From positions 62,001-126,000 of IMG/VR virus record IMGVR_UViG_3300020477_000990: 64,000 nucleotides of DNA. The stretch is one strand, 5' to 3'. The position numbers and the translations under genes are program-made. How positions within the stretch are numbered: the first letter of the stretch is position 1; every line of letters begins with the position of its first letter. Under the pieces are notes generated by a model. It was not told the origin of the DNA and ran no database searches. It worked only from the letters and a program-made list of their open reading frames with translations. Below, in pieces: positions 21,667 through 57,130 of this stretch.

Positions 21667-22877
21667 AAAATACAAAAATAAAAGTAGCAATGATTGGTTG
21701 CGGTAAGCTAGGTCAAGATTGTGCAGAAGTTATGGCTGAGAATTATTTTGTTGAAGGGTTTGATATTGAGCCAAGACAACCAGAAAATTTTAAAATGCAA
21801 TCAACTATTAAAGAAGCAGTTAAAGAAAAAGATATAGTTTTTATTGCGGCACCAACACCACATGATCCAAGGTATGATGGTTCAACACCAACTGCACATT
21901 TGGAACCAAAAGATTTTGATTATACAATTGTAAAAAATATTTTAAGTGAAGTAAATCAATTTGTTAATAAAAAGCAATTAGTAGTTTTAATATCAACAGT
22001 ATTACCTGGCACTACAAGACGTGAACTTGAACCTTTAATTACAAATGCAAGATTTGTTTATAATCCTTATTTAATAGCAATGGGATCTGTTAAATGGGAT
22101 ATGGTTAATCCAGAAATGGTTATGATTGGTACAGAAGATGGATCTAAAACAGGTGATGCAAAAGAATTAATAGATTTTTATAAACCAATGATGCAAAATA
22201 AACCAAGGTACATAGTAGGAACTTGGGATGAATGTGAATCAATAAAAATATTTTATAACACATTTATATCAGCAAAGATTGGGTTAGTTAATATGATTCA
22301 AGACGTAGCAGAAAAGCAAGGTAATATTAATGTTGATGTAGTAACATCTGCACTTGCATATTCTGATATGCGTATTATGGGTCCTAGATATATGACAGCA
22401 GGTATGGGCGATGGAGGTGCTTGTCACCCTAGAGATAACATTGCTTTACGTTGGATGGCAGATAATTTAGGATTAGGATATGATTTATTTGATGCTATAA
22501 TGGGAGCAAGAGAAGTTCAAGCAGAAAATTTAGCAAAGAAATGTATGGAATATAATTTACCAATTGTTATAGTTGGTAAAGCATATAAGCCACAGGTTCC
22601 ATATACAAATGGATCATATAGTTTATTAATTGGACATTACATTGAAAAAGCAGGGAGAACTTTGTACTACCAAGATGAGCATACAGGTGATAAGCCACCA
22701 AAAGATTTAGGAAGGGCAGTTTATCTATTAGCACATAATCCAAAAGTTACATACGGAACAGATGATACAGCAAAGTATGATTTTCCAAAAGGTTCTATAA
22801 TACTTGATCCATGGAGACAATGTCCACAGATAGAAGGATGTCGAGTTGTCGAGTATGGAAACACAAGAAACATATAA
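21663..22877 (+). CDS. UDP-glucose/GDP-mannose 6-dehydrogenase family protein
   Basis: IGCGKLG, AAPTP, STVLPGT, YNPYL, GGACHPRD. Confidence 0.9.
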   Translation: MKNTKIKVAMIGCGKLGQDCAEVMAENYFVEGFDIEPRQPENFKMQSTIKEAVKEKDIVFIAAPTPHDPRYDGSTPTAHLEPKDFDYTIVKNILSEVNQFVNKKQLVVLISTVLPGTTRRELEPLITNARFVYNPYLIAMGSVKWDMVNPEMVMIGTEDGSKTGDAKELIDFYKPMMQNKPRYIVGTWDECESIKIFYNTFISAKIGLVNMIQDVAEKQGNINVDVVTSALAYSDMRIMGPRYMTAGMGDGGACHPRDNIALRWMADNLGLGYDLFDAIMGAREVQAENLAKKCMEYNLPIVIVGKAYKPQVPYTNGSYSLLIGHYIEKAGRTLYYQDEHTGDKPPKDLGRAVYLLAHNPKVTYGTDDTAKYDFPKGSIILDPWRQCPQIEGCRVVEYGNTRNI

Positions 22878-24228
22878 TAAATTTTTAGAAATTGCTAAAA
22901 AATATAAACATTTTTGTCCTTTGGTATATAATCATGTACATATAGGAACAACGAATGCTAAATCATATTGTTGTGTAGCCAAGGGTAATGAGATAACTAG
23001 GAACAAAAAACTTACAGACTATTGGAACTCAGAAATTGTTAATAAAGATAGAGCCGATATGTTATCTAATAGTCCTAAAGGTAAATTAAAAGAATGCACG
23101 ATTTGTTGGGACGAAGAGGAGATAGGTGCAAAGTCATATAGACATTTAGCTATTGAGAGATATGATCTTAATGAAAACGATAGCACAAAAGACGAAGTAT
23201 TAAAATTGATAGAAAACGTAGAGGCAGTTGAACAAGGCAATGAAGTACCTCATATGCCAACTAGTTATGATATAAAGTTTGGTAACTTATGCAATTTAAA
23301 ATGTCCCTCTTGCAATCCAGATAATAGTTCACAGATATATAAAGAAATAAAAGAAAATAAAAAAATATTTAATGAAATTGATAATGAACATTATTATTTA
23401 ACAACTGAAAATGATTTCAAATGGATAGAAAATAAAGAATGGTGGAAAGTTTTTGAAGAAGCAACAGCAACGCCAACGAAATTGTACAGATTTAAATCAA
23501 CAGGTGGAGAACCATTACTTAATAAATCACTTATAACTTATTTAAAAAAATTAATAACTGATGGAAAAGCAAAAGATATAAAATTAAATCTTGTAACAAA
23601 TGGAATTAAAATCTCAAAAGACCTTCTTGTAAATGTTTTAAATAAATTCAAGAGATGTAGTTTAACAATTAGTATTGATGGAACTAATAAGGAATATGAA
23701 TATTTGAGATTTCCAGGTAAATGGAAAGTATTAGATGGTAATGTAAAACAAGGTTATAAACTTGATATTAAAAATGTAAAATTTATGATTCATCCTACAT
23801 TATCAGCTATGAATATTTTATCTATTCTTCAAGTTTATGAGTATGCTTTAGGTGTTGGTACTTTGAAAGATCCGAATGTTGGCAATAGAGAATTTTCTAA
23901 GATAAGTTCATTTGCTATGGCATGGGATCCAGAGCATATTTGTATAACTAATTTATTAAATGATAATATGAAAACAAAAGTAATAGATTATTATAATAAT
24001 TATATCGATAGGTTTGAAAAATCTTATCCTTTTGCTAAAAAACGTGTTAAGGAAGAGTATATTTCACAATTTAAAGATATAATTAAATTAGTTAAACGTG
24101 CAAAAGCAGATCCAGTTTATATTCAAAAATTTGTAAAGTATATTAAAATAATCGATAGTATAAGAAATATTAGTTTTGAAAAAAGCTGTCCTAAAGAGTA
24201 TCACTTATTTAAAGAATATTTTGAGTGA
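22846..24228 (+). CDS. N-terminal-twitch radical SAM protein
   Basis: CPLV..SYCC..CTIC; KFGNLCNLKCPSC; TGGEP; SIDG. Confidence 0.85.
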   Translation: MSSMETQETYNKFLEIAKKYKHFCPLVYNHVHIGTTNAKSYCCVAKGNEITRNKKLTDYWNSEIVNKDRADMLSNSPKGKLKECTICWDEEEIGAKSYRHLAIERYDLNENDSTKDEVLKLIENVEAVEQGNEVPHMPTSYDIKFGNLCNLKCPSCNPDNSSQIYKEIKENKKIFNEIDNEHYYLTTENDFKWIENKEWWKVFEEATATPTKLYRFKSTGGEPLLNKSLITYLKKLITDGKAKDIKLNLVTNGIKISKDLLVNVLNKFKRCSLTISIDGTNKEYEYLRFPGKWKVLDGNVKQGYKLDIKNVKFMIHPTLSAMNILSILQVYEYALGVGTLKDPNVGNREFSKISSFAMAWDPEHICITNLLNDNMKTKVIDYYNNYIDRFEKSYPFAKKRVKEEYISQFKDIIKLVKRAKADPVYIQKFVKYIKIIDSIRNISFEKSCPKEYHLFKEYFE

Positions 24229-32659: not shown

Positions 32660-32956
32660 ATGATAGGCGATAACTATAACAAGGTATTAGCTAATCATAT
32701 CTTCAATAGATTAGAAGAAATACAAACAGATGAGCATAGGATTCTAAATCAACCTAAATTATGGGCATCAGGCTTTCTTTTTACGGTAAATGACATTGAA
32801 AATATCATACAAGAAGTAAATAGTGCTAGTTTTGACGAAAGGGCATTATGGCACGACAAAATAAAACCCACAGAGGGCGACGTAAAGTCGGAAGTAAAAA
32901 AAGAAGAAACAGACGTAGACAAAGAAAGAAAAGAAGATAGTTCATATCTTGACTAA
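32660..32956 (+). CDS. Hypothetical protein
   Basis: ATG 32660 right after the upstream stop. Confidence 0.55.
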   Translation: MIGDNYNKVLANHIFNRLEEIQTDEHRILNQPKLWASGFLFTVNDIENIIQEVNSASFDERALWHDKIKPTEGDVKSEVKKEETDVDKERKEDSSYLD

Positions 32957-32977
32957 TCATATATTTTAAAGTATAAT
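32949..32977 (+). promoter_or_regulatory. Sigma70 promoter of the tmRNA gene, TTGACT-N17-TATAAT
   Basis: Near-consensus boxes. Confidence 0.8.
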
Positions 32978-32983
32978 TACTAT

Positions 32984-33228
32984 TGTAACGTTGAAGTTAT
33001 TGGAATAGATTATACGGACGTCGGGGCAGTACCGACCACCTCCACCAAAATTATACAAGTTTCGGGGGTGAACTAGGATCGACGGTAATTCGAAAGAATA
33101 ATGGAGTTGCCCGGATGTAAGCTCGGTTAACGCGAACACATTTACAAATGCAGATGAAAATCTAGCACTTGCGGCCTAGTTAATAGGCTAACGGGGTTGG
33201 CAAGTACCTGGCAACAGAAACTTGCCGT
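32984..33228 (+). ncRNA. ssrA: Circularly permuted two-piece tmRNA (alphaproteobacterial type), tag ADENLALAA
   Basis: Acceptor piece with T-arm GTCGG-GGCAGTA-CCGAC and CACCTCC-A-CCA (ends 33047); 16-nt intervening segment; coding piece starts GGGGGTGAACTAGGATCGAC (33064); G3.U70 pair; tag ORF 33150-33179; outer ends approximate. Confidence 0.92.
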
Positions 33229-33231
33229 TTA

Positions 33232-34584
33232 ATGTCAAATAAATATATGTATATGGAAACTAAAATAAAAAATAGTAATGTCAGCAGTTTGACTCATTTA
33301 AAAGATATTAGTAAAATTTCAAAAACTTTTTGCGTATATCCATTTACCGTAATGTTTGTTGGATCAGGTGGAACACCTGTTCCTTGTTGTATTAGTGAAC
33401 ATCATAAACATCCAGTAAAAGGAGAAGGATCTACTGAAAAAGGTGAGTTTATTCTTCCTCATAATTCATTAAAAGACTATTGGAATTCAGAAGCAATAAA
33501 CAGATTAAGACAACGATTACTTGAAGGTAAAAAAGATCCAGGGTGTAAACGTTGTTGGGTTGATGAAGCACAAGGGCAATCATCAAAACGTATTAAAGAT
33601 GCAACAAAGATACCTGGAGCAAATTTAGATGAGTTAACTTTAGAGCAATTTAAAGAGCAAGTAATTAAAAGGCCAAAAGTATTATGGATTGATTTACAAA
33701 TGGCAAACTTATGTAATATGGCCTGCCGTATGTGTAATCCATGGAACAGTTCTGAAATTGAAAGAGAATCAGAAAAGCATAAAGAATTAATATCACAAAA
33801 TAAAACATTTAAAGAACTTTGGGTAGAACCTTTACCAGAAGTAAAAAAAACAAAAGATTATTGGAGAGATCCTAAATTTACAAAAGAATTAGAAGAGTTA
33901 ATTCCTACTTTAGAATGTTTAACTGTAAGTGGTGGTGAACCAACAGTCAACAAATACTTTAATGATATTATTGATTTTTGTATTAGAGAAGGCCATGCTA
34001 AAAATTTAATACTTAAATTTAATACTAACGGACAACAAATTAATAGAAAGTATATGGATAAACTAGAGCCATTTAAGTATATTGAAATGAAAGTTAGTAT
34101 TGATGGAACTGGAACAGTTTTTGATTATATACGTCATCTAGGCAAATGGGAAACAGTATCTAAGAATAGAATTATGTTTGAAGAATATAGATCAGAACGA
34201 TTCGATGTTAATAGTGATCCAACATATCAAGTTTTAAATATATTAAATTTACCAGAACTATTACAATGGCATTTAGATAATGATTTAAAAGTTACAAATT
34301 TAAATCCAGTTCATGTTCCAGAATTTTATAATATATCTTGCTTACCAAATCAAATTCGTGAAGTTGCTTATAATAAATTGCATAAATTTCTTACAGACGA
34401 TTTGCATACTACTTTAAAAGAAAGTATTGAAAATGTTTTATTGCATTTACAGGCAGAGGATATTACTTTTCAAAATAGATGGTACCCTAAATTTTTCCAA
34501 CATACTGAAATGCTGGATAAAATGAGAGGCCAATCATTTGAAAAAATGGTTCCAGAATTATATAATTTAACCAAGAATAAATAA
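33232..34584 (+). CDS. N-terminal-twitch radical SAM protein
   Basis: FCVYPF..PCC..CKRC; ANLCNMACRMC; SGGEP; SIDG. Confidence 0.85.
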   Translation: MSNKYMYMETKIKNSNVSSLTHLKDISKISKTFCVYPFTVMFVGSGGTPVPCCISEHHKHPVKGEGSTEKGEFILPHNSLKDYWNSEAINRLRQRLLEGKKDPGCKRCWVDEAQGQSSKRIKDATKIPGANLDELTLEQFKEQVIKRPKVLWIDLQMANLCNMACRMCNPWNSSEIERESEKHKELISQNKTFKELWVEPLPEVKKTKDYWRDPKFTKELEELIPTLECLTVSGGEPTVNKYFNDIIDFCIREGHAKNLILKFNTNGQQINRKYMDKLEPFKYIEMKVSIDGTGTVFDYIRHLGKWETVSKNRIMFEEYRSERFDVNSDPTYQVLNILNLPELLQWHLDNDLKVTNLNPVHVPEFYNISCLPNQIREVAYNKLHKFLTDDLHTTLKESIENVLLHLQAEDITFQNRWYPKFFQHTEMLDKMRGQSFEKMVPELYNLTKNK

Positions 34585-39340: not shown

Positions 39341-39369
39341 TTTTGCTCTTAGGTGAGCAAAATTTTTTT
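39341..39369 (+). terminator. Intrinsic-terminator-like hairpin in a gene leader
   Basis: TTTTGCTC-TTAGGT-GAGCAAAA followed by T7. Confidence 0.6.
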
Positions 39370-39400
39370 GACTGATGGAAAAAAGAAAAGAGGATATAAT

Positions 39401-40225
39401 ATGACACAATTAATAAATCCAAGTAAATTTACAGATGTTTCGGGCCGTTTACGGTCCTTTTTTTTGGCTAAAGGTTTTCAAGAAGTTCATACACAGAATA
39501 GATTAAGTATATTGGCGGCTTGTGAAGACCCTGGTACGGTATCAACCTATAACTATGCCGGGCAAGTCTGGCCCTTACCACAAACGGGCCAAATGTGGCT
39601 CGAATATGAATTACTTACAAAGCCAGCTACGCCTGGCTTTTTTTGTGTCTCCACTTCCTATAGGCAAGAACCAAATCCTATAGATGGTAGACATGATTTA
39701 ATATTTCCAATGTTTGAGTTTGAGTTCCCTGGAACAATTAAAGACTTAGAAGTAATGGAAAAGGAATTAGTAGAATATATGGGGTATTGTAAACAAGAAG
39801 ATGTAGTTGCTAAAGATTACATTGATTGGGCTAAAGAGTTTAATACAAATGAATTAGGACATGATCACGAAGAACAAATGTGTGAAGGCAATAAAATATG
39901 TATGATACAAAACTTTCCAAATTATACATCACCGTTTTGGAATATGAAACAAAATGGAGATGGAACAGCGGCTAAAATAGATGTTATTATAGCAGGTCAA
40001 GAAACAATAGGTTCAGCTGAAAGATCAACTGATAAAGCAGAGATGAGAGATATGTTTAATACAATTAGTGAAGGAATGTATGCTGATTTATTGTTTGGTA
40101 AGTTTGGTAAAGATAGAGTAAACAAAGAACTAGATGAATTTTTAAGTTATGACTTTATGCCTAGAGTAGGTGGCGGAATAGGATTAACTAGATTAATTCG
40201 TGCTGATAGTATAATTAATGGTTGA
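39401..40225 (+). CDS. Class II (Asp/Asn/Lys) aminoacyl-tRNA-synthetase catalytic-domain paralog
   Basis: SYRQE..RH..FPMFEFE (motif 2), ETIGSAER, GGGIGLTRL (motif 3); no anticodon-binding domain. Confidence 0.8.
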   Translation: MTQLINPSKFTDVSGRLRSFFLAKGFQEVHTQNRLSILAACEDPGTVSTYNYAGQVWPLPQTGQMWLEYELLTKPATPGFFCVSTSYRQEPNPIDGRHDLIFPMFEFEFPGTIKDLEVMEKELVEYMGYCKQEDVVAKDYIDWAKEFNTNELGHDHEEQMCEGNKICMIQNFPNYTSPFWNMKQNGDGTAAKIDVIIAGQETIGSAERSTDKAEMRDMFNTISEGMYADLLFGKFGKDRVNKELDEFLSYDFMPRVGGGIGLTRLIRADSIING

Positions 40226-41131: not shown

Positions 41132-41143
41132 TTCGCTAGTCAT

Positions 41144-41179
41144 AAAAAAAGGAAGGAGTGTTTTTAGTACACCCCTTCC
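41144..41179 (-). terminator. Intrinsic terminator of the acidic-protein gene
   Basis: GGAAGG...CCTTCC stem with A7 on the + strand (U-tract on -). Confidence 0.7.
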
Positions 41180-41203
41180 ATCCATTCACGTGGGTATTTA
41201 AAT

Positions 41204-41569
41204 CTATTTTTTGTCGTCCTCGTCTTCGTAATCACCATCAATAACATCGTCATCATCTTCTTCAAAGTCATCATCTTCGTCATCATAACGATAATCTTCG
41301 TCATCATCAAAGTCATCATCTTCGTCATCTGAATCATCTTCGTCATCATCAAAGTCATTATCACAAGCACAAGGTGCCTCATAACAATCGTCACAAACTT
41401 CATCAGCATCATAGTCATCATCTGAATCATCTTCGTGATCGTCATCATAGTCATAGTCATCATCATAATCATGTACTGAATCTAAATTTAAATGATCAAA
41501 AAGCTCTTCTAATTTGTTTTTGATAACATCTAATTCGTTTTCAATTTGTTCAATTCTGTCTTTGTCCAT
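41204..41569 (-). CDS. Asp-rich polyanionic protein with a CxxC-x4-CxC motif
   Basis: N-terminal coiled coil, long D/E tract, CDDCYEAPCAC; AGGAG RBS; own terminator. Confidence 0.8.
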   Translation of the reverse strand: MDKDRIEQIENELDVIKNKLEELFDHLNLDSVHDYDDDYDYDDDHEDDSDDDYDADEVCDDCYEAPCACDNDFDDDEDDSDDEDDDFDDDEDYRYDDEDDDFEEDDDDVIDGDYEDEDDKK

Positions 41570-41710
41570 GTCTACACTCCTACCAGTATCAATTTATTAC
41601 TAATGTATTTAGGTATCTTTACTGTATGATTAAGTATTTGTATAACGCAATAACTTATGTTATAATGTAAAATAAATATAGTAATAGCTATAGATAAAGA
41701 AGGTAAAACA

Positions 41711-42361
41711 ATGCCATATTTTTTAAAAACATACAACAAAACTTTAGTGTATCATTTATGTCCAAAGAATGCTTGTACAACAATTGCTCATATGTTAATT
41801 CAAGCTGATGGTAATGGATATGTTAATGACACACATAAAGATTATTATATAGTGCATAGTTTATCTAATCCAAATAATAATTATGAGTATTGGACTAATT
41901 GTGATGCAGAAATTAAGTTAGCAGTTAAACGTGATCCAGTTAAACGTTTTGTTAGTGCATATAAAAATAGAATTGTGTATCATGATGATTTAAGTAAAGA
42001 TGAATATTTTGATAAAGCATTAGAAAAAGATTTTAAACCTTGGCCAATTTATAATAGATCATCAGATAAAACTATAAATGAGTTTATACAAAATTTTGAC
42101 AAGTATTGGGAAAATCCGTGGGTGCAAGGGCATTTTAAATCACAAACAACTTTCTTAGGAAAGCAAGATTATTATACACATATATTTGATATGTCTGAGT
42201 TAGATAAAGTACGAGACTTAATTGCTGAAGTATCTGGTAAAGAAATAGTATTACCTTGCTTACAAACAGGTGGAAATGATATTAGTGTAGACTTATCAGA
42301 AGATAGTATAAAATGGATTAATGATAGGTATGCTGAAGATTATGAAAACGGATGGTATTAA
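41711..42361 (+). CDS. Sulfotransferase family 2-like protein
   Basis: PKNACTT, RDPVKRFVSAY, HFKSQT. Confidence 0.8.
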   Translation: MPYFLKTYNKTLVYHLCPKNACTTIAHMLIQADGNGYVNDTHKDYYIVHSLSNPNNNYEYWTNCDAEIKLAVKRDPVKRFVSAYKNRIVYHDDLSKDEYFDKALEKDFKPWPIYNRSSDKTINEFIQNFDKYWENPWVQGHFKSQTTFLGKQDYYTHIFDMSELDKVRDLIAEVSGKEIVLPCLQTGGNDISVDLSEDSIKWINDRYAEDYENGWY

Positions 42362-43746
42362 ATACAAGTATGGAAAACATTAAAATAAATTTAGTTTGGG
42401 ATAACTGGTCTGATAAAGGACCTTTACCAAATGGGCTACATCCAAAATATATAAATGAATGGGAAACTAAATGGAAGGACAGATATGATATTAATGTTCT
42501 TACACGTTTTATTCCGTTAGATAGATATAATTTAGGATTTTTTCCTTTGCTATGCGATCAAGCTGGAATAGATATAACACATATAAAGCCAGAAGAAATA
42601 GGAGCAAATATTTCTAGTACACCTGATTGGTATGTAATGGAACCAAATCATATGGATCTATCATTGCTAACAGAAAATATGTTTGGTAATATAAATGAGC
42701 ATACTTTAAAAATGTTACGTGAAGGACAAACAAAACTAATATTGTATTATGCATATGAAGCCTTTCCAGTAAATCAAGTGAACTGGATTAATGTTATTGA
42801 AAGAAGTTTAGGCTGGCTTAAAATACCAAAAGAAAACTTTATATTAATATTTGGTGATCAAAAGTTTGATGAAAATTATCAAAAATATCTAGCATCTGGG
42901 CAAGGTCCTTTTTATGCTTATTACTTACAAAATGTTTTTGTGTATGATCATTTTGCTTGGGAGTTTTCAGATTATATTAAAAGTATGGTAATAGGAACTG
43001 AAAGAGAATCAAAAGAACTTGTTCCTATTGATGGTGATACAATGTATAAGCCAAGACCTAAAAAATTTTTATGTTTAAATGGTGGAGGTCGTCCACATAG
43101 AAAATGGCTAATGACAGAGTTAAAAAGAAATAATCTATTAGATCATGGAATAGTTAGTTATCTAAATAAATTTGATATACCATATGATCCAGCTGACTTT
43201 GTTTTTGTTCCAAGTGAAAAAGGTACTGGTGATACAGCATTGTTAGAAGCAGTTCGGTATCATCATGAGCATGGAAATGATATAAAAGAAATACAATTAG
43301 ATGTTGATCCTGTGCATGATGCTTGGCATAATAGAGGAATGACAGTACAACATTATAAAGATACATACTTTAATGTTACAACAGAAACATGGCCAGCTGA
43401 ACCTAGTTTCTTTGTTACTGAAAAATTATTTAAACCAATTATTAATATGCAACCTTTTATACTAGTAGGGCACCCTGGCTTATTAAAATATTTACATGAA
43501 GAAGGTTATGAAACATTTGATCAAATTTGGTTTGATGAGCATTATGATTCTATTCCTAACCATAAAGAACGTTTTTATCATGTAATGGAAAATATTAAAA
43601 ATGTTTGTGCATTAGATCAATCAGAGTTACAAAATATGTATGTTAAAGTATGGGATAAATTAAGACACAATCGAGAATTATTTTTAAAGAAAAATCATAC
43701 TAACTATTGGATTGAACTTATAAAAACAATGATAGAGATAAAATGA
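42352..43746 (+). CDS. Putative glycosyltransferase (C-terminus resembles GT10/GT-B)
   Basis: YFNVTTET...FVTEKLFKPI..QPFILVG motif. Confidence 0.45.
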   Translation: MVLNTSMENIKINLVWDNWSDKGPLPNGLHPKYINEWETKWKDRYDINVLTRFIPLDRYNLGFFPLLCDQAGIDITHIKPEEIGANISSTPDWYVMEPNHMDLSLLTENMFGNINEHTLKMLREGQTKLILYYAYEAFPVNQVNWINVIERSLGWLKIPKENFILIFGDQKFDENYQKYLASGQGPFYAYYLQNVFVYDHFAWEFSDYIKSMVIGTERESKELVPIDGDTMYKPRPKKFLCLNGGGRPHRKWLMTELKRNNLLDHGIVSYLNKFDIPYDPADFVFVPSEKGTGDTALLEAVRYHHEHGNDIKEIQLDVDPVHDAWHNRGMTVQHYKDTYFNVTTETWPAEPSFFVTEKLFKPIINMQPFILVGHPGLLKYLHEEGYETFDQIWFDEHYDSIPNHKERFYHVMENIKNVCALDQSELQNMYVKVWDKLRHNRELFLKKNHTNYWIELIKTMIEIK

Positions 43747-45014
43747 GTAACTATAAAGAAACTATAGATAAACTTGATAAAGATTTTGGTAAAACTTTTT
43801 GTATAAAACCTTTTACTGAAATATCAACGTCATCAGTTGGGCATATGAAATTATGTTGCTTTTCACAAAGCATTGGTAGTAATAATATGGCATATTATCA
43901 AGATAAATTTGAAAATGTTTTTCAAAATAATAATGATTTAATAACAATTAGAAAAGCAATGCTTGAAGGAAAAGCAATTAAAGAATGTCGTAATTGTTAT
44001 GTTGAAGAAAAAAATGGAAAAATATCTCAACGACAAGAAGAAAACTTTATAATGTATAATGAAAACAAAGAATTATTTAATAATATAATAAACAAAGGAA
44101 CAGCAATAGTAAAAAGTATTGATTTAAAGTTTGGTAACAAATGTAATTATGCCTGTATAATGTGTGATACAGGATCAAGCTCTTTACATTCAAAAGAAAT
44201 AGAAGCTAATCCACATCCTGATGATGTTAGAAAAGTAATAAATTTTGAACCATACTATTTTAATTTTCCTGATGAAAAAATGGATGATCTTTTATCAATA
44301 TCATCTAACTTGGGACGTGTTAAAAGTACAGGTGGAGAGCCATTTCTTTTAGATGGCTTTAAAGATTATATTAAAAAATTAGTTGACAACGGCTATGCTA
44401 AAAATATTGATTTTACAACGGTGTCAAATGGCACAGTTGATTGTACTGATCTTTTACCATATATGAATCAATTTAAATCATTTAGATTAAGATGGTCAAT
44501 TGATGGAACTGATAAAGTTTATAATTTTATTAGATACCCTGGTAGTTTTGATAGAATGAGTAGAGTACATAAAAAAATATCTGAAAGCATTATTAGTAAT
44601 AACTATACTAATGTTGAAGTTCAATTAGATCCTACAATACAATTGTTTAATGTGCATAACATAGTTGAGTTATTAAAATATGCAGAGTCTTTAAAAATAA
44701 TTAGTAGAGTAGAAATGGGGTACATTTATAAAGAACCTAGGTATTTAGATACATCATTAATGCCTATAGACATTTTACGCAATATATTTGATAGTGCTGA
44801 CAACGAAATTAAAAATATTAATGTAGTAAGCAATTATAATGATATTAAAGAACTTGCTTTTAAAAAGCATAATGAATATACAGAAAGTCAAAAGAAAGAT
44901 ATTTTTAATTTAACAAAAAGTATGGTTGCTTATTGGAAAAGAGTAAGAAAGTTAGAAGCTAAAGAGCATATTTCAACTTATGATAAACTAATAGAACATT
45001 ATTCTAAGATGTAA
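43743..45014 (+). CDS. N-terminal-twitch radical SAM protein
   Basis: FCIKPF..KLCC..CRNC; KFGNKCNYACIMC; TGGEPF; WSIDG. Confidence 0.85.
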   Translation: MSNYKETIDKLDKDFGKTFCIKPFTEISTSSVGHMKLCCFSQSIGSNNMAYYQDKFENVFQNNNDLITIRKAMLEGKAIKECRNCYVEEKNGKISQRQEENFIMYNENKELFNNIINKGTAIVKSIDLKFGNKCNYACIMCDTGSSSLHSKEIEANPHPDDVRKVINFEPYYFNFPDEKMDDLLSISSNLGRVKSTGGEPFLLDGFKDYIKKLVDNGYAKNIDFTTVSNGTVDCTDLLPYMNQFKSFRLRWSIDGTDKVYNFIRYPGSFDRMSRVHKKISESIISNNYTNVEVQLDPTIQLFNVHNIVELLKYAESLKIISRVEMGYIYKEPRYLDTSLMPIDILRNIFDSADNEIKNINVVSNYNDIKELAFKKHNEYTESQKKDIFNLTKSMVAYWKRVRKLEAKEHISTYDKLIEHYSKM

Positions 45015-45222
45015 TAAATCTTTTTGGTATTTTTTTATATTTCTTTTTAAATGCTTCTTCAAATCCTACTTCAGATTCTTCCGTTTCGTTATTGCCCCAT
45101 AATCTACCAAAGCATCTATCAGCCATAGACTCTATTTCTTCGTCAGTCCAATGTAATGGAATTAAATGTCCTTTGTCAATCCAAAGTAGCCTATTAGCTT
45201 CTTTAAATTGTTTCCAAGTCAT
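45004..45222 (-). CDS. Hypothetical protein
   Basis: 72-aa ORF, ATGA-coupled to the upstream peptide. Confidence 0.55.
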   Translation of the reverse strand: MTWKQFKEANRLLWIDKGHLIPLHWTDEEIESMADRCFGRLWGNNETEESEVGFEEAFKKKYKKIPKRFITS

Positions 45223-45353
45223 GATAATGGAGGCCAGTTATTGTATTCTGGATATTTTGATTTTCTTTTGTTAATTGCTTTAGTAGGTTTTGCTTTTTTA
45301 TTTCGTCCACCTGCCGTACGGTCAATTCTTCTAGGAGTCCTATTAGTAGACAT
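45219..45353 (-). CDS. 44-aa Lys/Arg-rich peptide not in the track (MSTNRTPRRIDRTAGGRNKKAKPTKAINKRKSKYPEYNNWPPLS)
   Basis: Upstream CTAAATA box on the - strand; ATGA overlap with the next gene. Confidence 0.55.
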   Translation of the reverse strand: MSTNRTPRRIDRTAGGRNKKAKPTKAINKRKSKYPEYNNWPPLS

Positions 45354-45419
45354 ATTCTTTTTAGAAGTCATATATTGTATTTAGTTTGGCCGGGAAAAAC
45401 CCCTGTATATTGTATTTTA

Positions 45420-45900: not shown

Positions 45901-46698
45901 TTATATGTATCTGTTAAATCCCCAGAATCGTTCGCGACACCACCAACACTCTTTGCAATGGAATTCCATGTTAGGGTCTTTCATGTATTCGACATCTCCA
46001 CCATTTTCACAACTTCTAGTAATAGGAAATAGCTCGTCTAGTATACCTTGACTTTTATATAATTCTGCTATAGATCTTTTATTAAAGTTTCTAAATGGTT
46101 GTTGCCAACACCAACCTTCTGCTTCTTCTAATTCTTCTGTAGTAGATCCTGTTTCGTATGTAACATCTGGATCTCTTTCATATAGATATGCCGCTTGATC
46201 CATTCTCATGTGTTTAATGCCATCATGATAATCTTCATATAATTCTCTTAGATCTTTAGGAGGATTAGCTGTCATACCATTAAAGAATATAACTCCGCGG
46301 CCTTCTGGATTGTTTTCTTGTGCTAAAATATTAGCTTCGTTTTCTTTTTGAGCTTTGTCATAGTTACTTAATCTAACTTGTTCATCTGAATCACTACCTA
46401 AATATGTTACTTCGTCAACTTTCATTTGGTTTTGACGTCTATCAGACATATCAATACCTGTAAGTTCTTGTATTTTATCACAGACTTTATTAGTATATCT
46501 AATGTGCCAATCTTTTGGAGGATATCCATTTGTTGTTGCTATAATTATTTTAAGATCTGGTCTTTCTTCTTTTTTATACTTTGCAATACAATATGCCATC
46601 ATAGCACTATCGGCACCACCTGACATTTTAAGTATGGCTGTATGATGATTGCTAGGTATATCTAAATTCCAATTTCCTTGTGGGGTAGTAAAAATCAT
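45901..46698 (-). CDS. QueC-like PP-loop ATPase (second paralog)
   Basis: MSGGADS; SC...CKECWWC; PFRNFNK..IA. Confidence 0.75.
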   Translation of the reverse strand: MIFTTPQGNWNLDIPSNHHTAILKMSGGADSAMMAYCIAKYKKEERPDLKIIIATTNGYPPKDWHIRYTNKVCDKIQELTGIDMSDRRQNQMKVDEVTYLGSDSDEQVRLSNYDKAQKENEANILAQENNPEGRGVIFFNGMTANPPKDLRELYEDYHDGIKHMRMDQAAYLYERDPDVTYETGSTTEELEEAEGWCWQQPFRNFNKRSIAELYKSQGILDELFPITRSCENGGDVEYMKDPNMEFHCKECWWCRERFWGFNRYI

Positions 46699-46701
46699 TT
46701 A

Positions 46702-47721
46702 TTATCCTAATATTTTCTTTACTCTTAATTCGTCTTGATCAGTAACTACATGAAATTCTATTCTATGTAGTAATCTTCTTTCTAATTTTTTCATTGTAAG
46801 TCCTGCAACGTCACCTTTAACATCAGTACGTCTATGGATACAGTTAACTTGGTCCATATATAATATATCGCCATCGTCCCATATATGATCATATATGTAA
46901 TCTTCTTGTACATAATTGTCCATAAAGTAATTTTTAAAATCAATGAACTCACTAGTAGACGCACCTATAATTTCTGTTACTTGTGATGGAGAAAAGTGTA
47001 CACCTTCTTTACCATTAGTACAAATTGCTACTAAAGGTTTAACTTTATTCATAAGGTGGTCTCCACCATGACCAAATTCTATATTTCTATAACTTTCATC
47101 TACGTCTGGGATAATACCTTCTTCACCATCAACAAAGCCCCAACGTACTTGAGTGTTACGCATCCAAAATTTATGTTCAGCACTTTCTTTTTCAAACCTA
47201 TCAATAGTTTGACATACTTGAGTAACTGAACCTGTAGTTCCTTCTACACCTTGTAAGCCAACAAACTCTGGTAATGGTCTTTCAATGTAACCTTTAATTG
47301 ATTTATTACCTGGTAAGTAAAAAGGAATTTTATCACGTAATGATTCTGCATTGTGCCAATTTAATCTTTTACTAAAGCCTGCGGCAACACCTTCATATGA
47401 TGTACCTTTTTTATTAGACCATTTTTTCTTTGCTGTTACTTTGTCAAGTCCAGGATATATCGGACAACCGTCTTCATCATAGTAACCAGTAAGGTGTTTA
47501 GTTGGAACATCTTTCTTTTGTCCATGAGTTGCTACTGTACCTAATAAACCTGATAGTTCATAAAATTGTTCTACATTAAAATTAACTTTTTTAAGAGCTA
47601 CAACTAATTCTTGTTTTAGTAAGTGTGCAAGGTCATGTACGTCTTGATAGTTGAAAGGATATTTTAATCCTGTAACTTTAACACCATATTTTCCAAATAG
47701 TTTTTTCTTTTGTACTTTCAT
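46702..47721 (-). CDS. TauD-like Fe/2OG enzyme with HxA motif
   Basis: WHNAES in place of WHND; HIWDDGDILYMDQVNCIHRR. Confidence 0.78.
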   Translation of the reverse strand: MKVQKKKLFGKYGVKVTGLKYPFNYQDVHDLAHLLKQELVVALKKVNFNVEQFYELSGLLGTVATHGQKKDVPTKHLTGYYDEDGCPIYPGLDKVTAKKKWSNKKGTSYEGVAAGFSKRLNWHNAESLRDKIPFYLPGNKSIKGYIERPLPEFVGLQGVEGTTGSVTQVCQTIDRFEKESAEHKFWMRNTQVRWGFVDGEEGIIPDVDESYRNIEFGHGGDHLMNKVKPLVAICTNGKEGVHFSPSQVTEIIGASTSEFIDFKNYFMDNYVQEDYIYDHIWDDGDILYMDQVNCIHRRTDVKGDVAGLTMKKLERRLLHRIEFHVVTDQDELRVKKILG

Positions 47722-48755
47722 TAAACCATAACCTCTAATCTATTTAATAAACGTTCTTCTAACGCAGTCATATCTAAACCATCAACAGCATAATTCATAT
47801 CTGTTCTTCTATGCATACAAGTAATTTGATCCATATAAAATATATCACCATCTTGCCATACATGATCATAGATATATTCTGGAGTAACATACTCATCCAT
47901 AATTCTTTGTTTAAGTTCTTTCCATTGATTTGATGCTACATAATCTTCAGCTAATATTTTTTTATGTTCATCATCGTATAATATTTTAGTAGTACCATCA
48001 GCAATTTCATTTGATATATCAACAACTTGACTAGGAGTAAATCTTAAACCTTCTTTACCATTTGGAGCAACTTGTACTAATGGTTGTTGTTTAATGTTTA
48101 ATTTAATAGCATCTTTATATTTGTCCATATCTTCTTTAGTTGACATTTCATCAGTACCATGAATATCATCATAACCTTCTTCACCTGGTTTAGGTAAGTC
48201 TGGCATAATACCTTCATCACCTGGAACTACACCCCAAAGTACATTTAATTTTTTTAATAGTTCTTTGTTTTCTTGAGGTTCTTTTTCAAATCTATCTATC
48301 ATTTGGCATACTTGAGTAATACTACCTGTTGTTCCTTTAACTCCTTGTAGTCCTACAAAGTTTGCCGCAGGATTAGTACTATCAGTTTCATTGTTATGCC
48401 AATTTAATCTTTTAGAAATACCAGTAGGCATTCCAGCATATCTTCCTTCTTTTGTTTTCTTTGCTGTTACTTTCCACATACCAGGAAGTATAGTTTTACC
48501 TTCATCATCTAAATAGCCAGTCCAACCAGTTGGTTCTGGGATACCTGCTTGTAATCCAAATGTGCTAATTTTACCTAGGCGTCCTGTAAGCTCATAATAC
48601 TGCTTTGCTGTATAGTTAATTTTAGGTAACACTACAACTAGTTCGTTAGTTAGCAATTTTTTAAGCTCAGCTATTTCGCCCCATTTAAATGGATATGAAA
48701 GCTCTGTTACAGATGCCCCCATATTTCCAAATCCTTTGAGTGGTGATACTTTCAT
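47721..48755 (-). CDS. TauD-like Fe/2OG enzyme with HxN motif
   Basis: WHNNETD; HVWQDGDIFYMDQITCMHRR. Confidence 0.78.
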   Translation of the reverse strand: MKVSPLKGFGNMGASVTELSYPFKWGEIAELKKLLTNELVVVLPKINYTAKQYYELTGRLGKISTFGLQAGIPEPTGWTGYLDDEGKTILPGMWKVTAKKTKEGRYAGMPTGISKRLNWHNNETDSTNPAANFVGLQGVKGTTGSITQVCQMIDRFEKEPQENKELLKKLNVLWGVVPGDEGIMPDLPKPGEEGYDDIHGTDEMSTKEDMDKYKDAIKLNIKQQPLVQVAPNGKEGLRFTPSQVVDISNEIADGTTKILYDDEHKKILAEDYVASNQWKELKQRIMDEYVTPEYIYDHVWQDGDIFYMDQITCMHRRTDMNYAVDGLDMTALEERLLNRLEVMV

Positions 48756-54645: not shown

Positions 54646-55881
54646 CTACTGTGAAATTCGCCCTAATATTGAACACATTTTTTCAGCTGAATACCCACGT
54701 GCTTTATCATAATAGGCCAATAAATCTTGGGTGTTTTTGTAGGTGTACGTTGTTTTACGTTTTTTAATTAGTTCTATAAAGTCAGATACAAAACTATATT
54801 TTGTAGCTTCAAAAGGCGATCCTGCTGATCTAATTAATAAAAGAACTTCATTAATAACTTCTTCTTTTATATCATCTGGAAGTATAGCCAAGTCTAATGG
54901 TTTAGGCCACATTACTAATACAGGAATAAATTCATCAAAGTTATTTTCTTCTGTGTATCTAATTAAATCAGGAAGTTGATCTAAATTTAATAATTGTATT
55001 GCTGATGTTAATACTGAACTAATATTATTAAAACCTTTTTCTTTAATTAATCTGTTAAACTTATATTGATTATTAAAAACTTTATTCCAAGTTGCAGGCC
55101 ATCTAATATATTCAAATGTACTACCCATTCCATCTGTAGACCAATGCACTTCAAATTTTTGAAACTTATTCATTATGTCTATCATCTTTGTTAAGTCAGT
55201 TGTACCATTTGTTACCATCATTATAGAAATGTTTCTTGCATATTTTGTTTCAGATAATCTTTTAATAAATTCTCTAAAGCCTTCTAATAATGTAGGCTCA
55301 CCTCCTGTAAATTTTATTTTTTGTATAGTATGAGCTGTACCTAATAATTCATTTAATTGCTTTTCATGGAAGTTAGTATTATGAGCATCATCTGGAATAT
55401 GTTTTTTTAAATGTAAAGGAACTTTATGTTGCTCTTTTTCTTTAACGTGTAAAGATGAACTATGTCCATCACACATAATACAAGCAAGATTACATTTGTT
55501 ACCAAACTTTATATCTAATGTTCTTAATTCTAAATGTTTATCTTTTTTAATTTTATTTAAAAAATCTGGATCAATATCTTCATAACGTTTTGTAATAGAA
55601 TATCTTTTACTCATATTGTATGCACCAGACTGTTCATATTGATAACATCTAGTACAAGACTTAACTGGTTTATTATCTAACATTTTTTGTCTAATGTCAT
55701 TTAATACTTTACTGTTTTTCCAATTATTAATAAATGAATCTTTATATAAATCTGCTTCAACAGTTTCTGAATAACAACATAACATTGAATGGCCTTGTGC
55801 TGAATTGGCTATTTCAGTAAATGGTAAAGCACAAAAATACTTGCCATGATCATTTAAAAACTTTTCATATTCTCTACTCAT
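54646..55881 (-). CDS. N-terminal-twitch radical SAM protein (similar to 43743..45014)
   Basis: FCALPF..LCC..CTRC; KFGNKCNLACIMC; TGGEP. Confidence 0.85.
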   Translation of the reverse strand: MSREYEKFLNDHGKYFCALPFTEIANSAQGHSMLCCYSETVEADLYKDSFINNWKNSKVLNDIRQKMLDNKPVKSCTRCYQYEQSGAYNMSKRYSITKRYEDIDPDFLNKIKKDKHLELRTLDIKFGNKCNLACIMCDGHSSSLHVKEKEQHKVPLHLKKHIPDDAHNTNFHEKQLNELLGTAHTIQKIKFTGGEPTLLEGFREFIKRLSETKYARNISIMMVTNGTTDLTKMIDIMNKFQKFEVHWSTDGMGSTFEYIRWPATWNKVFNNQYKFNRLIKEKGFNNISSVLTSAIQLLNLDQLPDLIRYTEENNFDEFIPVLVMWPKPLDLAILPDDIKEEVINEVLLLIRSAGSPFEATKYSFVSDFIELIKKRKTTYTYKNTQDLLAYYDKARGYSAEKMCSILGRISQ

Positions 55882-57130
55882 TTAGTTCTGCCCCAATGAC
55901 AGGTGTTAATCCTTTTACTGCTTTATTAAACATAGCTTCTGTCATATCGTTATGTTTTGATTTTTGTACACATAATCCACAGCCACATATTTTATTTGGA
56001 CAAGTTATTACAGGCATTTTACCTGTTGCTAATTGTTTTTCTAATCTTAATAATACTTTTTCACTTTCTGATATCTTACCAATAGGCCCACGTTTACCAC
56101 CAAAATTTGCACGACAAGTTTGATGGTGTAGTATATTATCATATTCTTGTTCAATATGTAACCAATTCCAATTAATTAAGCAAGACCAATCTTTGTATTC
56201 TGTTGAACACGCAAACACACTTGGATTCCATTTATCAGTATCAAGTTCTTTATTATTGTTATTATAATGATCATCAGTTAATGTATAAAATGTTCTTTGC
56301 CCACAGCAAGGTCTTCCTAAACTTTTTCTACCTTCATCTTTTTTAGGTTCAACTTTTGCTTTTTGTTTTTGTACTTTTTCTTGATCATCTTTATATTCAT
56401 ATTCAGCATCATTGTTTTCATCTATTTTTTTAGGTTGCTTTTGATTATTTTCTTTTTTATTTCTAATTGCCCAAAACTCTCTAAACCATTTATGTTGTTC
56501 TGGAGTATATCTATGATTGTACTTGTCATTTTCATAGCTCTCTCCAATAATTCTTGGTACAAATTTTACATTATCTCTTGTAAACTTTCCAACTAAATCA
56601 ATACATTCATTAAAGTATTCTTCTTTAGCATGAAACATTAAATTAACTTTGTGTCTAACATTTGAATCTTTTAATTGATAAATTCTATCTATTACTTTAT
56701 TTTTTATTTTTTGATCTGCTTCACAATGATAACTTACTGTTACACTATCAACATTATCAATTAATTTTGTACAATATTTTTCTGACATGGCACCATTAGT
56801 TGTTACATCAACTATTACATCATCATCATTTTGATTGTGTATGTATTCACACATATCTAAAAAGTTTGGATTGTTAGTTGGCTCACCGCCTGTAAAACCA
56901 ATGTTCCACTTACGTTTGTAAGTCATATATGATTGTAAAAGTTTTTTATAATCAAAAACAAACTTACTTGTTTTAATTAATGTTTCTAAACTTGCGTGAG
57001 GTGAAGTATTATTATGTCTATGTGAAGGACAATATGTACAATCAAAATTACATCTTAAACCTAAATCCCAAGTTACTTCAAATGAGTAAGGATTTTTTAT
57101 ATTATTATCTATTGCAATTATCTCTGACAT
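55874..57130 (-). CDS. Radical SAM protein with C-terminal twitch-like cysteines (same type as 15961..17127)
   Basis: WDLGLRCNFDCTYC; FTGGEPT; C-terminal C...CPNKICGCGLC. Confidence 0.85.
   Translation of the reverse strand: MSEIIAIDNNIKNPYSFEVTWDLGLRCNFDCTYCPSHRHNNTSPHASLETLIKTSKFVFDYKKLLQSYMTYKRKWNIGFTGGEPTNNPNFLDMCEYIHNQNDDDVIVDVTTNGAMSEKYCTKLIDNVDSVTVSYHCEADQKIKNKVIDRIYQLKDSNVRHKVNLMFHAKEEYFNECIDLVGKFTRDNVKFVPRIIGESYENDKYNHRYTPEQHKWFREFWAIRNKKENNQKQPKKIDENNDAEYEYKDDQEKVQKQKAKVEPKKDEGRKSLGRPCCGQRTFYTLTDDHYNNNNKELDTDKWNPSVFACSTEYKDWSCLINWNWLHIEQEYDNILHHQTCRANFGGKRGPIGKISESEKVLLRLEKQLATGKMPVITCPNKICGCGLCVQKSKHNDMTEAMFNKAVKGLTPVIGAELNE

What the first reader, a model, noticed from the sequence alone, without database searches (positions are those of the whole stretch)
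41204..41569. Asp-rich polyanion with an embedded CxxC-x4-CxC motif: candidate substrate, metal store or DNA mimic
Seen: a 121-aa stand-alone gene with RBS and terminator. It has an N-terminal coiled coil, then a D/E/Y tract interrupted by CDDCYEAPCAC. The window holds several Asp/Asn beta-hydroxylase-like and TauD-like enzymes and many radical SAMs. Known: beta-hydroxyaspartate is an Fe(III) ligand in marine siderophores; Cys-rich cores are typical radical SAM RiPP substrates; acidic phage proteins such as Ocr mimic DNA. Inference: it may be a ribosomally made metal chelator, a precursor for the cluster, or an anti-defence mimic.
Basis: partly seen in the sequence, partly recalled or inferred. 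Interest (0 to 1): 0.62.

Follow-up and report, generated by a model that had tools for sequence, protein, structure and literature searches.

The report
Hyperacidic cysteine-knuckle protein of marine jumbo phages
This is a real, conserved small gene found only in a group of radical-SAM-rich marine jumbo phages; it encodes a short coiled-coil helix followed by a disordered, extremely negatively charged tail with one invariant four-cysteine motif, most likely a polyanionic decoy for basic nucleic-acid-binding proteins, though its function is untested.

Summary
Window 41204-41569 (-) is a 121-aa gene with an AGGAG ribosome-binding site and a strong terminator hairpin. It is 56% Asp+Glu, has net charge -61, and is by far the most acidic ORF in a 328-kb marine jumbo phage.

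It matches no Pfam, PHROG or NCBIfam family, but it is not an orphan. I found 14 members (82-154 aa), all on marine viral contigs or mis-binned MAG contigs.

Across 12 aligned members, D14, L27 and C-x2-C-Y-x2-P-C-x-C are invariant. The six motif residues show only synonymous codon changes, while the acidic tracts vary freely in length. AlphaFold gives one confident N-terminal helix (heptad pattern) and disorder elsewhere.

Neighbouring genes differ from locus to locus, and the gene usually lies on the opposite strand with its own terminator. This argues against a dedicated precursor-maturase pair. Radical SAM genes are so dense in this lineage (22 in this genome) that proximity to one says little.

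Best reading (about 0.35): an oligomeric, flexible polyanion that mimics nucleic acid, with a small metal-thiolate knuckle. The nearest functional analogue is SPO1 Gp44.

Main rival (about 0.22): a metal or Fe-S carrier serving the phage's radical SAM enzymes. Neither reading has been tested biochemically.

The parts
41204..41569 (-). Coding sequence of the 121-aa hyperacidic protein (stop codon at 41204-41206)
   Evidence: 14 homologues found
41480..41566 (-). N-terminal amphipathic helix, residues 2-30. Hydrophobic residues at 6, 9, 13, 16, 20, 23, 27 give a 3-4 heptad spacing, so a predicted coiled coil.
   Evidence: AF2 pLDDT 83-92; heptad pattern; D14 and L27 invariant
41396..41479 (-). 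First acidic/aromatic disordered tract, residues 31-58; length varies between homologues
41363..41395 (-). Invariant four-cysteine motif C-x2-C-Y-x2-P-C-x-C, residues 59-69
   Evidence: Invariant in 12 of 12 aligned members; only synonymous codon changes at C, C, Y, P, C, C
41207..41362 (-). Second acidic/aromatic disordered tract, residues 70-121, ending in Lys-Lys. It shows in-frame length polymorphism in natural populations.
   Evidence: a 3-nt insertion after 41249 in DNA run X6
41577..41581 (-). Ribosome-binding site AGGAG, 7 nt before the ATG
   Evidence: sequence; GGAG-type sites at the same place in homologues
41605..41613 (-). Conserved upstream element CCTAAATAC, 44 nt before the ATG. 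It differs by one base from the genome's NATAAATA late-promoter-like motif. Its role is unproven.
   Evidence: present in 9 of 12 loci at the same distance and nowhere else in those loci; NATAAATA statistics
41141..41179 (-). Intrinsic terminator: 11-bp GC-rich stem plus a T7 run
   Evidence: every homologue carries a hairpin here, and three different stem sequences preserve the structure

Best explanation
The gene encodes a stand-alone, probably abundantly made phage protein with three parts. The first is a roughly 30-residue N-terminal coiled-coil helix that oligomerises it. The second is a long disordered tail of 53-66% Asp/Glu with aromatic residues embedded between acidic ones. The third is one tiny fixed element in the middle of the tail, C-x2-C-Y-x2-P-C-x-C, read here as a metal-thiolate (most simply Zn) knuckle. 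I propose it acts as a flexible polyanion that competes with nucleic acid for the basic surface of a DNA- or RNA-binding protein. The target could be a host protein (nuclease or defence protein, RNA polymerase, nucleoid protein, RNase) or one of the phage's own very basic proteins. Oligomerisation would add avidity, and the knuckle plus flanking aromatics would add specificity. Shown: the gene is real, and the architecture, charge, motif invariance and independence from neighbours are all established. Inferred: oligomerisation, metal binding, the decoy mechanism and any target.
For: Composition is extreme and conserved. Members are 47-60% Asp+Glu with net charge -35 to -89. Tail aromatic content is a steady 9-14%, and aromatics are almost always flanked by Asp or Glu. 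AF2 predicts a single confident helix with the rest disordered, using either a 2- or a 12-sequence alignment. The heptad pattern is clear, and the best (non-significant) PDB profile matches are GCN4-type coiled coils. The evolutionary pattern is that of a disordered protein with short fixed motifs: tract lengths vary from 26 to 93 residues after the motif, and there is an in-frame codon indel in a natural population, while the motif has zero replacements. It is a monocistronic unit with a strong RBS and its own terminator in every homologue, usually antisense to its neighbours, inside a mosaic accessory region. That arrangement is typical of phage host-interaction genes. A documented precedent exists: SPO1 Gp44 has a folded N-terminal anchor followed by a disordered 57% Asp/Glu region with no basic residues, which behaves like single-stranded DNA and binds RNA polymerase beta and beta' (PMC8208478).
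Against: No binding partner is known or testable here, and the oligomer test (complex prediction) could not be run. Mimicry does not require the invariant four-Cys motif. Thiolate metal sites are unusual in such an acidic setting. The conserved upstream element resembles the genome's late-type motif rather than a sigma-70 early promoter, which would be odd for an anti-defence gene needed early. No homology to any known mimic was found. Base rates from cultured phages may not carry over to this lineage.
Confidence: 0.35

Rival explanations
1. It is a metal or Fe-S protein. A coiled-coil dimer would use CxxC plus PCxC to hold Zn, Fe or a bridging Fe-S cluster, and the carboxylate tracts would gather Fe or other cations. 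In this way it would store iron, deliver clusters or shuttle electrons for the phage's many radical SAM enzymes in iron-poor seawater.
For: The only invariant tail residues are four Cys, a Tyr and a Pro within 11 positions. CxxC and CxC are classical thiolate ligand pairs, and dimeric Fe-S carriers commonly bridge clusters between subunits (established knowledge, not tested here). The genome has 22 radical SAM hits, 14 of them N-terminal-twitch paralogues, plus an A-type Fe-S carrier at G000 8366-8671. Every larger contig carrying the family is also radical-SAM-rich: 23 in 242 kb, 9 in 71 kb, 6 in 36 kb, 5 in 24 kb. T4-like marine phages combining Fe-S assembly genes with a dozen radical SAM genes have been described (PMC5332604).
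Against: There is no similarity to any Fe-S, frataxin-like, metallothionein or rubredoxin family. Four Cys in 11 residues is too compact for one chain to ligate a cubane. The dense negative charge around the thiolates disfavours anionic metal-thiolate centres. The conserved aromatic content and the variable tract length are left unexplained. All members belong to one phage lineage, so co-occurrence with radical SAM genes cannot be separated from shared descent.
Confidence: 0.22
2. It is a substrate of post-translational modification by enzymes of the accessory island. Candidate modifications are radical SAM/SPASM thioether or other cross-links at the Cys motif (ranthipeptide-like Cys-Asp chemistry), Asp beta-hydroxylation by the PF05118 or TauD-like oxygenases, Tyr O-sulfation by the adjacent sulfotransferase, and Ser phosphorylation by the kinase-like neighbour.
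For: A radical SAM/SPASM gene lies next to the acidic gene in L007, L012 and L023, and one gene away in L017. The window gene is divergent from a Sulfotransfer_2 gene, and Tyr residues sit in Asp-Tyr contexts. PF05118 genes lie within 1.4-6.5 kb in 5 loci. The helix followed by a Cys motif loosely recalls a leader-plus-core layout.
Against: No enzyme is a constant neighbour. The gene is mostly on the opposite strand with its own terminator. G000 has no close orthologue of the adjacent SPASM enzymes (30% identity or less, more than 100 kb away). L031 and L035 have no radical SAM within 7-8 kb. The lineage carries roughly one radical SAM gene per 4-30 kb, about one per 6 kb in this island, so adjacency comes cheaply. 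The EGF Asx-hydroxylation consensus is not met in any member. Tyr and Phe interchange between homologues, which argues against obligatory sulfation. No protease or exporter was seen in the flanks.
Confidence: 0.13
3. It is a virion or assembly component. One version is an acidic protein packaged with the DNA or balancing internal basic proteins. Another is a coiled-coil-anchored surface decoration that makes the particle more negative.
For: The conserved upstream CTAAATA element differs by one base from the NATAAATA motif found upstream of the portal, head-module and many other genes. Tail-fibre genes lie 7-9 kb away in the window and closer in L002. T4-type heads are known to contain acidic internal peptides (established knowledge, not tested here).
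Against: The gene is not in the head or tail modules; the head module is at G000 199-208 kb. It lies among metabolic accessory genes. CTAAATA is not enriched upstream of genes in this genome. No virion proteome is available.
Confidence: 0.08
4. It is not a functional gene but an open frame created by a GAT/GAC-rich low-complexity stretch.
For: The repeat also opens a 102-aa frame in another phase (41164-41472 -). Blastn hits to Erwinia and Xanthomonas jumbo phages over this stretch are low-complexity matches inside an unrelated 690-aa gene.
Against: There are 14 homologues with a conserved helix, an invariant motif under purifying selection, an RBS and a terminator. A metatranscriptome library holds a 167-nt contig identical to 41279-41440, although DNA carry-over cannot be excluded.
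Confidence: 0.01

Closest known systems
SPO1 Gp44 (flexible DNA-mimic inhibitor of bacterial RNA polymerase; PMC8208478)
   Same: A structured N-terminal module is followed by an intrinsically disordered region of about 57% Asp/Glu with almost no basic residues. It is phage-encoded and lineage-restricted.
   Different: No sequence similarity. Gp44's N-terminal domain binds DNA, whereas here it is a coiled-coil helix. Gp44 has no Cys motif and carries a further C-terminal domain. Its host and phage type also differ.
Rigid DNA-mimic anti-restriction proteins (T7 Ocr, ArdA, T4 Arn)
   Same: Small, very acidic phage or plasmid proteins, dimeric in the known cases, that act by occupying DNA-binding sites (established knowledge).
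   Different: Those are folded proteins that display charges at B-DNA spacing. This protein is predicted disordered beyond residue 30, is about twice as acidic, and shows no homology.
Disordered polyanions of eukaryotes (prothymosin alpha, DSS1)
   Same: Roughly 50% acidic, disordered, with embedded aromatics in the case of DSS1. They bind basic or OB-fold nucleic-acid-binding proteins without folding (established knowledge).
   Different: Unrelated organisms and sequences; neither has a coiled coil or a Cys motif.
Radical SAM/SPASM peptide substrates with Cys-Asp/Glu thioethers (ranthipeptides such as the PapB substrate; QhpC)
   Same: Cys residues next to Asp/Glu, an N-terminal helix-like leader, and SPASM radical SAM genes nearby in 4 of 14 loci.
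   Different: There is no fixed, co-oriented maturase. The protein is far larger and more acidic than known precursors, has a single motif rather than repeated Cx3D units, and has no protease or exporter nearby.
Dimeric Fe-S carriers with bridging clusters (A-type carriers with a CxC-type motif, Nfu CxxC, Mrp/Nbp35 CPxC)
   Same: Short Cys pairs, predicted oligomerisation, and a genome rich in Fe-S enzymes that already encodes an A-type carrier.
   Different: No Pfam or NCBIfam match to any of them. All four Cys fall within 11 residues of a disordered polyanion.
EGF-domain Asp/Asn beta-hydroxylation sites
   Same: C-x-D ... aromatic ... C-x-C looks similar at first sight, and PF05118 genes are present in the window.
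   Different: The consensus C-x-[DN]-x4-[FY]-x-C-x-C is one residue longer and is matched by no member. There are only four Cys, and the protein is cytoplasmic.

Membership tests
Any curated protein family (Pfam-A, PHROGs v4, NCBIfam) | Significant profile match | tested here: not met
   Zero families at E <= 0.01-0.1
Rigid DNA-mimic proteins (Ocr/ArdA type) | Strong net negative charge | tested here: met
   Net charge -61; 56% Asp+Glu
Rigid DNA-mimic proteins (Ocr/ArdA type) | Folded scaffold presenting carboxylates at DNA-phosphate spacing | tested here: not met
   AF2 pLDDT below 60 and no secondary structure beyond residue 30, with 2- and 12-sequence alignments
Rigid DNA-mimic proteins (Ocr/ArdA type) | Binds and blocks a DNA-binding enzyme | not testable with these tools
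   Needs biochemistry; the host is uncultured
Flexible DNA mimics (SPO1 Gp44-like) | Structured N-terminal module plus a disordered region of at least 50% Asp/Glu nearly free of basic residues | tested here: met
   Helix 2-30; tail 53-66% Asp/Glu with 1.7% Lys+Arg across the family; Gp44 features from PMC8208478
Flexible DNA mimics (SPO1 Gp44-like) | Sequence homology to Gp44 | tested here: not met
   tblastn of P0001 against 50,697 phage records gave no match
Radical SAM/SPASM-matured peptides (sacti-/ranthipeptide type) | Precursor gene adjacent to and co-transcribed with a dedicated maturase, conserved across genomes | tested here: not met
   Neighbours vary, the gene is mostly antisense with its own terminator, and two loci lack any radical SAM in 7-8 kb
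Radical SAM/SPASM-matured peptides (sacti-/ranthipeptide type) | Conserved Cys-containing core | tested here: met
   C-x2-C-Y-x2-P-C-x-C invariant
Radical SAM/SPASM-matured peptides (sacti-/ranthipeptide type) | Covalent cross-link after maturation | not testable with these tools
   Needs co-expression and mass spectrometry
EGF-type Asx beta-hydroxylation substrates | Consensus C-x-[DN]-x4-[FY]-x-C-x-C | tested here: not met
   Regex matched 0 of 13 members
Fe-S carriers/scaffolds (PF01521, PF01592) | Profile match to the carrier fold | tested here: not met
   No Pfam hit for P0001. The genome's only PF01521 hit is a different gene, and there is no PF01592 hit.
Zinc-knuckle / metal-thiolate mini-motifs | Four invariant ligand residues in a short span | tested here: met
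   Four Cys invariant within 11 residues
Zinc-knuckle / metal-thiolate mini-motifs | Bound metal | not testable with these tools
   AF2 leaves the motif unstructured; complex prediction with Zn could not be run
Coiled-coil oligomers | a/d heptad hydrophobic pattern over at least 3 heptads | tested here: met
   Hydrophobic residues at 6, 9, 13, 16, 20, 23, 27 in three subfamilies; confident helix
Coiled-coil oligomers | Self-association | not tested
   Complex prediction was unreachable in six tries

The most novel reading that the evidence does not exclude
The family is a new kind of phage auxiliary protein. It would be a ribosomally made, coiled-coil-dimerised polyanion whose four-Cys knuckle and carboxylate tracts capture iron or hold a bridging Fe-S or rubredoxin-like centre. 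It would thereby feed or reduce the 20-plus radical SAM enzymes that this lineage of marine jumbo phages brings into an iron-starved host.
Probability: 0.18. Interest if true: 0.8.

Novelty: new variant of a known kind. Interest (0 to 1): 0.45.

Why it matters
If the decoy reading is right, this would be a second, independently evolved case of a flexible (disordered) nucleic-acid mimic in phages. It would also be the first from an uncultured marine jumbo-phage lineage that probably infects alphaproteobacteria, and it carries an unexplained invariant Cys motif that could serve as a handle for finding its target. If the metal reading is right, it would tie a phage-made polyanion to Fe-S supply for an extraordinary expansion of viral radical SAM genes, which bears on iron economy in the surface ocean. 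Either way, the family is small, sharply defined and cheap to test by expression, metal analysis and pull-downs.

Tried and rejected
1. Word-based protein search found only one homologue cluster, because low-complexity words saturated the 8000-candidate limit. Back-translated peptide scans of IMG/VR found none, and an exact-motif DNA scan found none. A looser motif scan succeeded.

2. Blastn hits over the acidic stretch to Erwinia and Xanthomonas jumbo phages are low-complexity matches inside a 690-aa gene, not homologues.

3. Two motif hits in non-acidic small ORFs (L018, L024) are treated as chance. Seven junk-frame hits in 596 Gb of genomes calibrate the background, and the L018 ORF has no relatives.

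4. Promoter class could not be settled. NATAAATA is strongly intergenic in this genome (63 of 102 ATAAATA sites). The gene's conserved CCTAAATAY is not a general motif (3 of 23 intergenic), and no sigma-70-like pair fits.

6. Complex prediction (homodimer of residues 1-72 with Zn) was unreachable six times, so there is no verdict.

7. The Atlas feature search returned only a viral cluster without annotation, at score 0.83. The PDB profile search returned nothing significant.

8. Tyr-sulfation and CK2-like Ser-phosphorylation ideas rest only on local sequence context and a neighbouring gene, and Tyr/Phe interchange argues against the former.

I re-ran it reading the same protein from locus L031.

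I repeated it with four full-length members.

Full report
**The observation**

Window 41204-41569 on the minus strand is an open frame of 121 codons plus stop.
- AGGAG lies 7 nt before the ATG (41577-41581).
- Downstream there is an 11-bp GC-rich hairpin followed by seven T (41179-41141). It folds at -22.2 kcal/mol, z = -4.6 against dinucleotide shuffles.
- The product has 52 Asp, 16 Glu, 8 Tyr, 4 Phe and 4 Cys, with net charge about -61.
- It is the most acidic of 698 ORFs of at least 60 aa in the genome; the runner-up is 35% acidic.
- The four Cys form CDDCYEAPCAC at residues 59-69.
- The other frame opened by the GAT/GAC repeat (41164-41472) is an artefact.

**The genome**

- The window is bases 62001-126000 of a 328,149-bp IMG/VR virus record with terminal repeats and about 32% GC.
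- Its head module is T4-like in order. The major capsid protein is 68.6% identical to that of Pseudomonas jumbo phage PA5oct.
- An alphaproteobacterial permuted tmRNA (Rfam RF01849, 131.6 bits) and five tRNAs lie in the window. With the low GC, this points to a marine alphaproteobacterial host.
- The stretch is held by marine metagenome runs from about ten studies.
- The genome has 22 radical SAM hits. Fourteen score above the cut-off for the N-terminal-twitch family NF033640. It also has one A-type Fe-S carrier and no IscU.
- T4-like marine viral genomes with Fe-S assembly genes and a dozen radical SAM genes have been noted before (PMC5332604).

**The family**

- No Pfam, PHROG or NCBIfam model matches. 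Nothing matches in 50,697 phage records or among PDB sequences.
- The word-based search gave one Tara Oceans homologue at 46% identity. The exhaustive profile search of 1.84 billion representatives gave six, mostly fragments.
- A degenerate DNA pattern for C-[DE]-[DE]-C-Y-x2-P-C-x-C found nine more members on IMG/VR contigs and two on short contigs binned into unrelated MAGs. One further member came from a JGI metagenome.
- Seven junk-frame matches in 596 Gb calibrate chance.
- In total there are 14 distinct members of 82-154 aa, all marine and all viral or viral-looking.

**Conservation**

- In a 12-sequence alignment the invariant positions are D14, L27, C59, C62, Y63, P66, C67 and C69.
- Each of the six motif residues shows synonymous codon variation and no replacement.
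- The acidic tracts change freely in length (26-93 residues after the motif), and a natural population carries a one-codon insertion.
- Composition stays fixed: 47-60% Asp+Glu overall, 9-14% aromatic residues in the tail, and aromatics almost always flanked by Asp or Glu.
- Most members end with a single Lys or Arg just after the polyanion.

**Structure**

- AlphaFold2, with either a 2- or a 12-sequence alignment, gives one confident helix (residues 2-30, pLDDT 83-92) and no structure elsewhere, pLDDT below 60.
- Hydrophobic residues fall at 6, 9, 13, 16, 20, 23 and 27, a canonical a/d heptad.
- I could not test self-association because complex prediction was unreachable in six tries.

**Transcription unit**

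- Every homologue is followed by a GC-rich hairpin with a T-run. Three different stem sequences occupy the same place, so the structure rather than the sequence is kept.
- Nine of twelve have CTAAATAY (often followed by TATTGAC) 44-45 nt before the ATG, and this occurs nowhere else in those loci.
- The genome's own NATAAATA motif is strongly intergenic. It lies upstream of the portal and other head-module genes and of the divergent sulfotransferase.
- The acidic gene's element differs from it at one position that is consistently C. I leave its role open.
- A marine metatranscriptome library contains a 167-nt contig identical to 41279-41440, but DNA carry-over cannot be excluded.

**Context across loci**

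| Locus | Immediate neighbours of the acidic gene |
|---|---|
| Window | kinase-like; sulfotransferase, then a 464-aa protein, then an N-twitch radical SAM |
| L007 | kinase-like; radical SAM/SPASM |
| L002 | the 457-aa homologue; a small secreted protein |
| G001 (L012) and L023 | radical SAM/SPASM; a SET-domain gene |
| L017 | SET-domain gene; a PHO4-like membrane protein |
| L020 | PHO4-like membrane protein; N-twitch radical SAM |
| L013 and L021 | two cupin-like genes |
| L019 | a fatty-acid desaturase |
| L031 and L035 | an 88-aa gene and PhoH, with no radical SAM in the 7-8 kb held |

- G000 has no close orthologue of the adjacent SPASM enzymes.
- The gene is usually antisense to its neighbours.
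- All larger contigs with the family are radical-SAM-rich. This lineage therefore carries one radical SAM gene per 4-30 kb, and adjacency has little weight.

**Interpretation**

- The data describe an independently transcribed, lineage-restricted protein: an oligomerising helix, a disordered polyanion with embedded aromatics, and one small invariant Cys motif.
- The closest documented mechanism is the flexible DNA mimic of SPO1 Gp44. There a folded N-terminal module carries a disordered 57% Asp/Glu segment that behaves like single-stranded DNA and binds RNA polymerase.
- I therefore favour an electrostatic decoy for a basic nucleic-acid-binding surface, with the motif as a metal-stabilised recognition knot (confidence about 0.35).
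- The main rival is a metal or Fe-S carrier or redox role serving the radical SAM enzymes (about 0.22). It explains the Cys motif and the genomic setting, but it has no homology support and faces an electrostatic objection.
- A role as a modification substrate (about 0.13) is weakened by the variable, antisense neighbourhood and by failure of the EGF hydroxylation consensus.
- A virion or assembly role (about 0.08) rests only on the late-like upstream element.
- A spurious ORF is excluded for practical purposes.

**Novelty and limits**

- The family is undescribed and matches no curated model. Its kind (a hyperacidic phage protein) is known, but the architecture is not.
- All members come from one phage lineage, so every co-occurrence is confounded by descent.
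- No function was tested. Oligomerisation, metal binding and the target are all inferences.

Noticed in passing
whole genome G000; in the window e.g. 12159-17127, 20185-24228, 33232-34584, 43743-45014, 54646-57130: Radical SAM genes are hugely expanded in this phage: 22 PF04055 hits in 328 kb, 14 of them above the cut-off for the N-terminal-twitch family NF033640. Related contigs are equally rich (23 in 242 kb, 9 in 71 kb). What these enzymes act on is unknown.
   Followed up: partly
window 32937-33228 (+): The phage encodes an alphaproteobacterial-type permuted tmRNA (Rfam RF01849, 131.6 bits; ARAGORN tag ADENLALAA). It points to an alphaproteobacterial host with SAR11-like GC content.
   Followed up: partly
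G000 8366-8671 (outside the window): There is an A-type Fe-S carrier gene (PF01521, 64.9 bits) and no IscU. This fits the Fe-S-related auxiliary genes reported for T4-like marine viral genomes (PMC5332604).
   Followed up: partly
window 39353-40225 (+): A 290-aa class II aminoacyl-tRNA-synthetase catalytic core without an anticodon domain (PF00152). It is 66% identical at the nucleotide level to the 'tRNA ligase' of Prochlorococcus phages P-SSM2, P-SSM5 and P-SSM7.
   Followed up: no
window 41605-41613 (-) and the same place in L002, L007, L012, L016, L017, L020, L023, L026: A conserved element CCTAAATAY, often followed by TATTGAC, sits 44-45 nt before the start codon. It is unique to this gene in every locus and is a one-base variant of the genome's NATAAATA motif.
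   Followed up: partly
window about 41185-41195 (-); L002 and L007 at the same place: A conserved CACGTG palindrome lies between the stop codon and the terminator hairpin in three homologues.
   Followed up: no
window 42352-43746 (+); L002 8528-9901; L007 34-1428; L012 17387-18766: A conserved 457-464-aa protein with no Pfam, PHROG or NCBIfam match is 71-85% identical between relatives. It often lies beside a sulfotransferase or an N-twitch radical SAM.
   Followed up: no
L012 9813-10124, L017 1026-1337, L023 813-1127; G000 143454-143759: A 103-aa SET-domain protein (PF00856) lies divergent from the acidic gene in three relatives but 40 kb away in this genome.
   Followed up: partly
window 46702-48755 (-) and 45901-46698 (-): Two tandem TauD-family dioxygenase paralogues lie next to a weak QueC-like ATP-pyrophosphatase-type gene.
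   Followed up: no
window 45219-45371 (-); G000 121796-122056 (+): These are very basic small ORFs rich in Lys and Arg. They could be partners for a polyanion if they are real genes.
   Followed up: no
L031 (contig CAYYMP010000094.1) and L035 (contig NZLM01000038.1): Short contigs carrying family members and other genes of this phage lineage are binned into a Dehalococcoidales MAG and a Methanobacteriota MAG. This is most likely mis-binning of viral DNA.
   Followed up: partly
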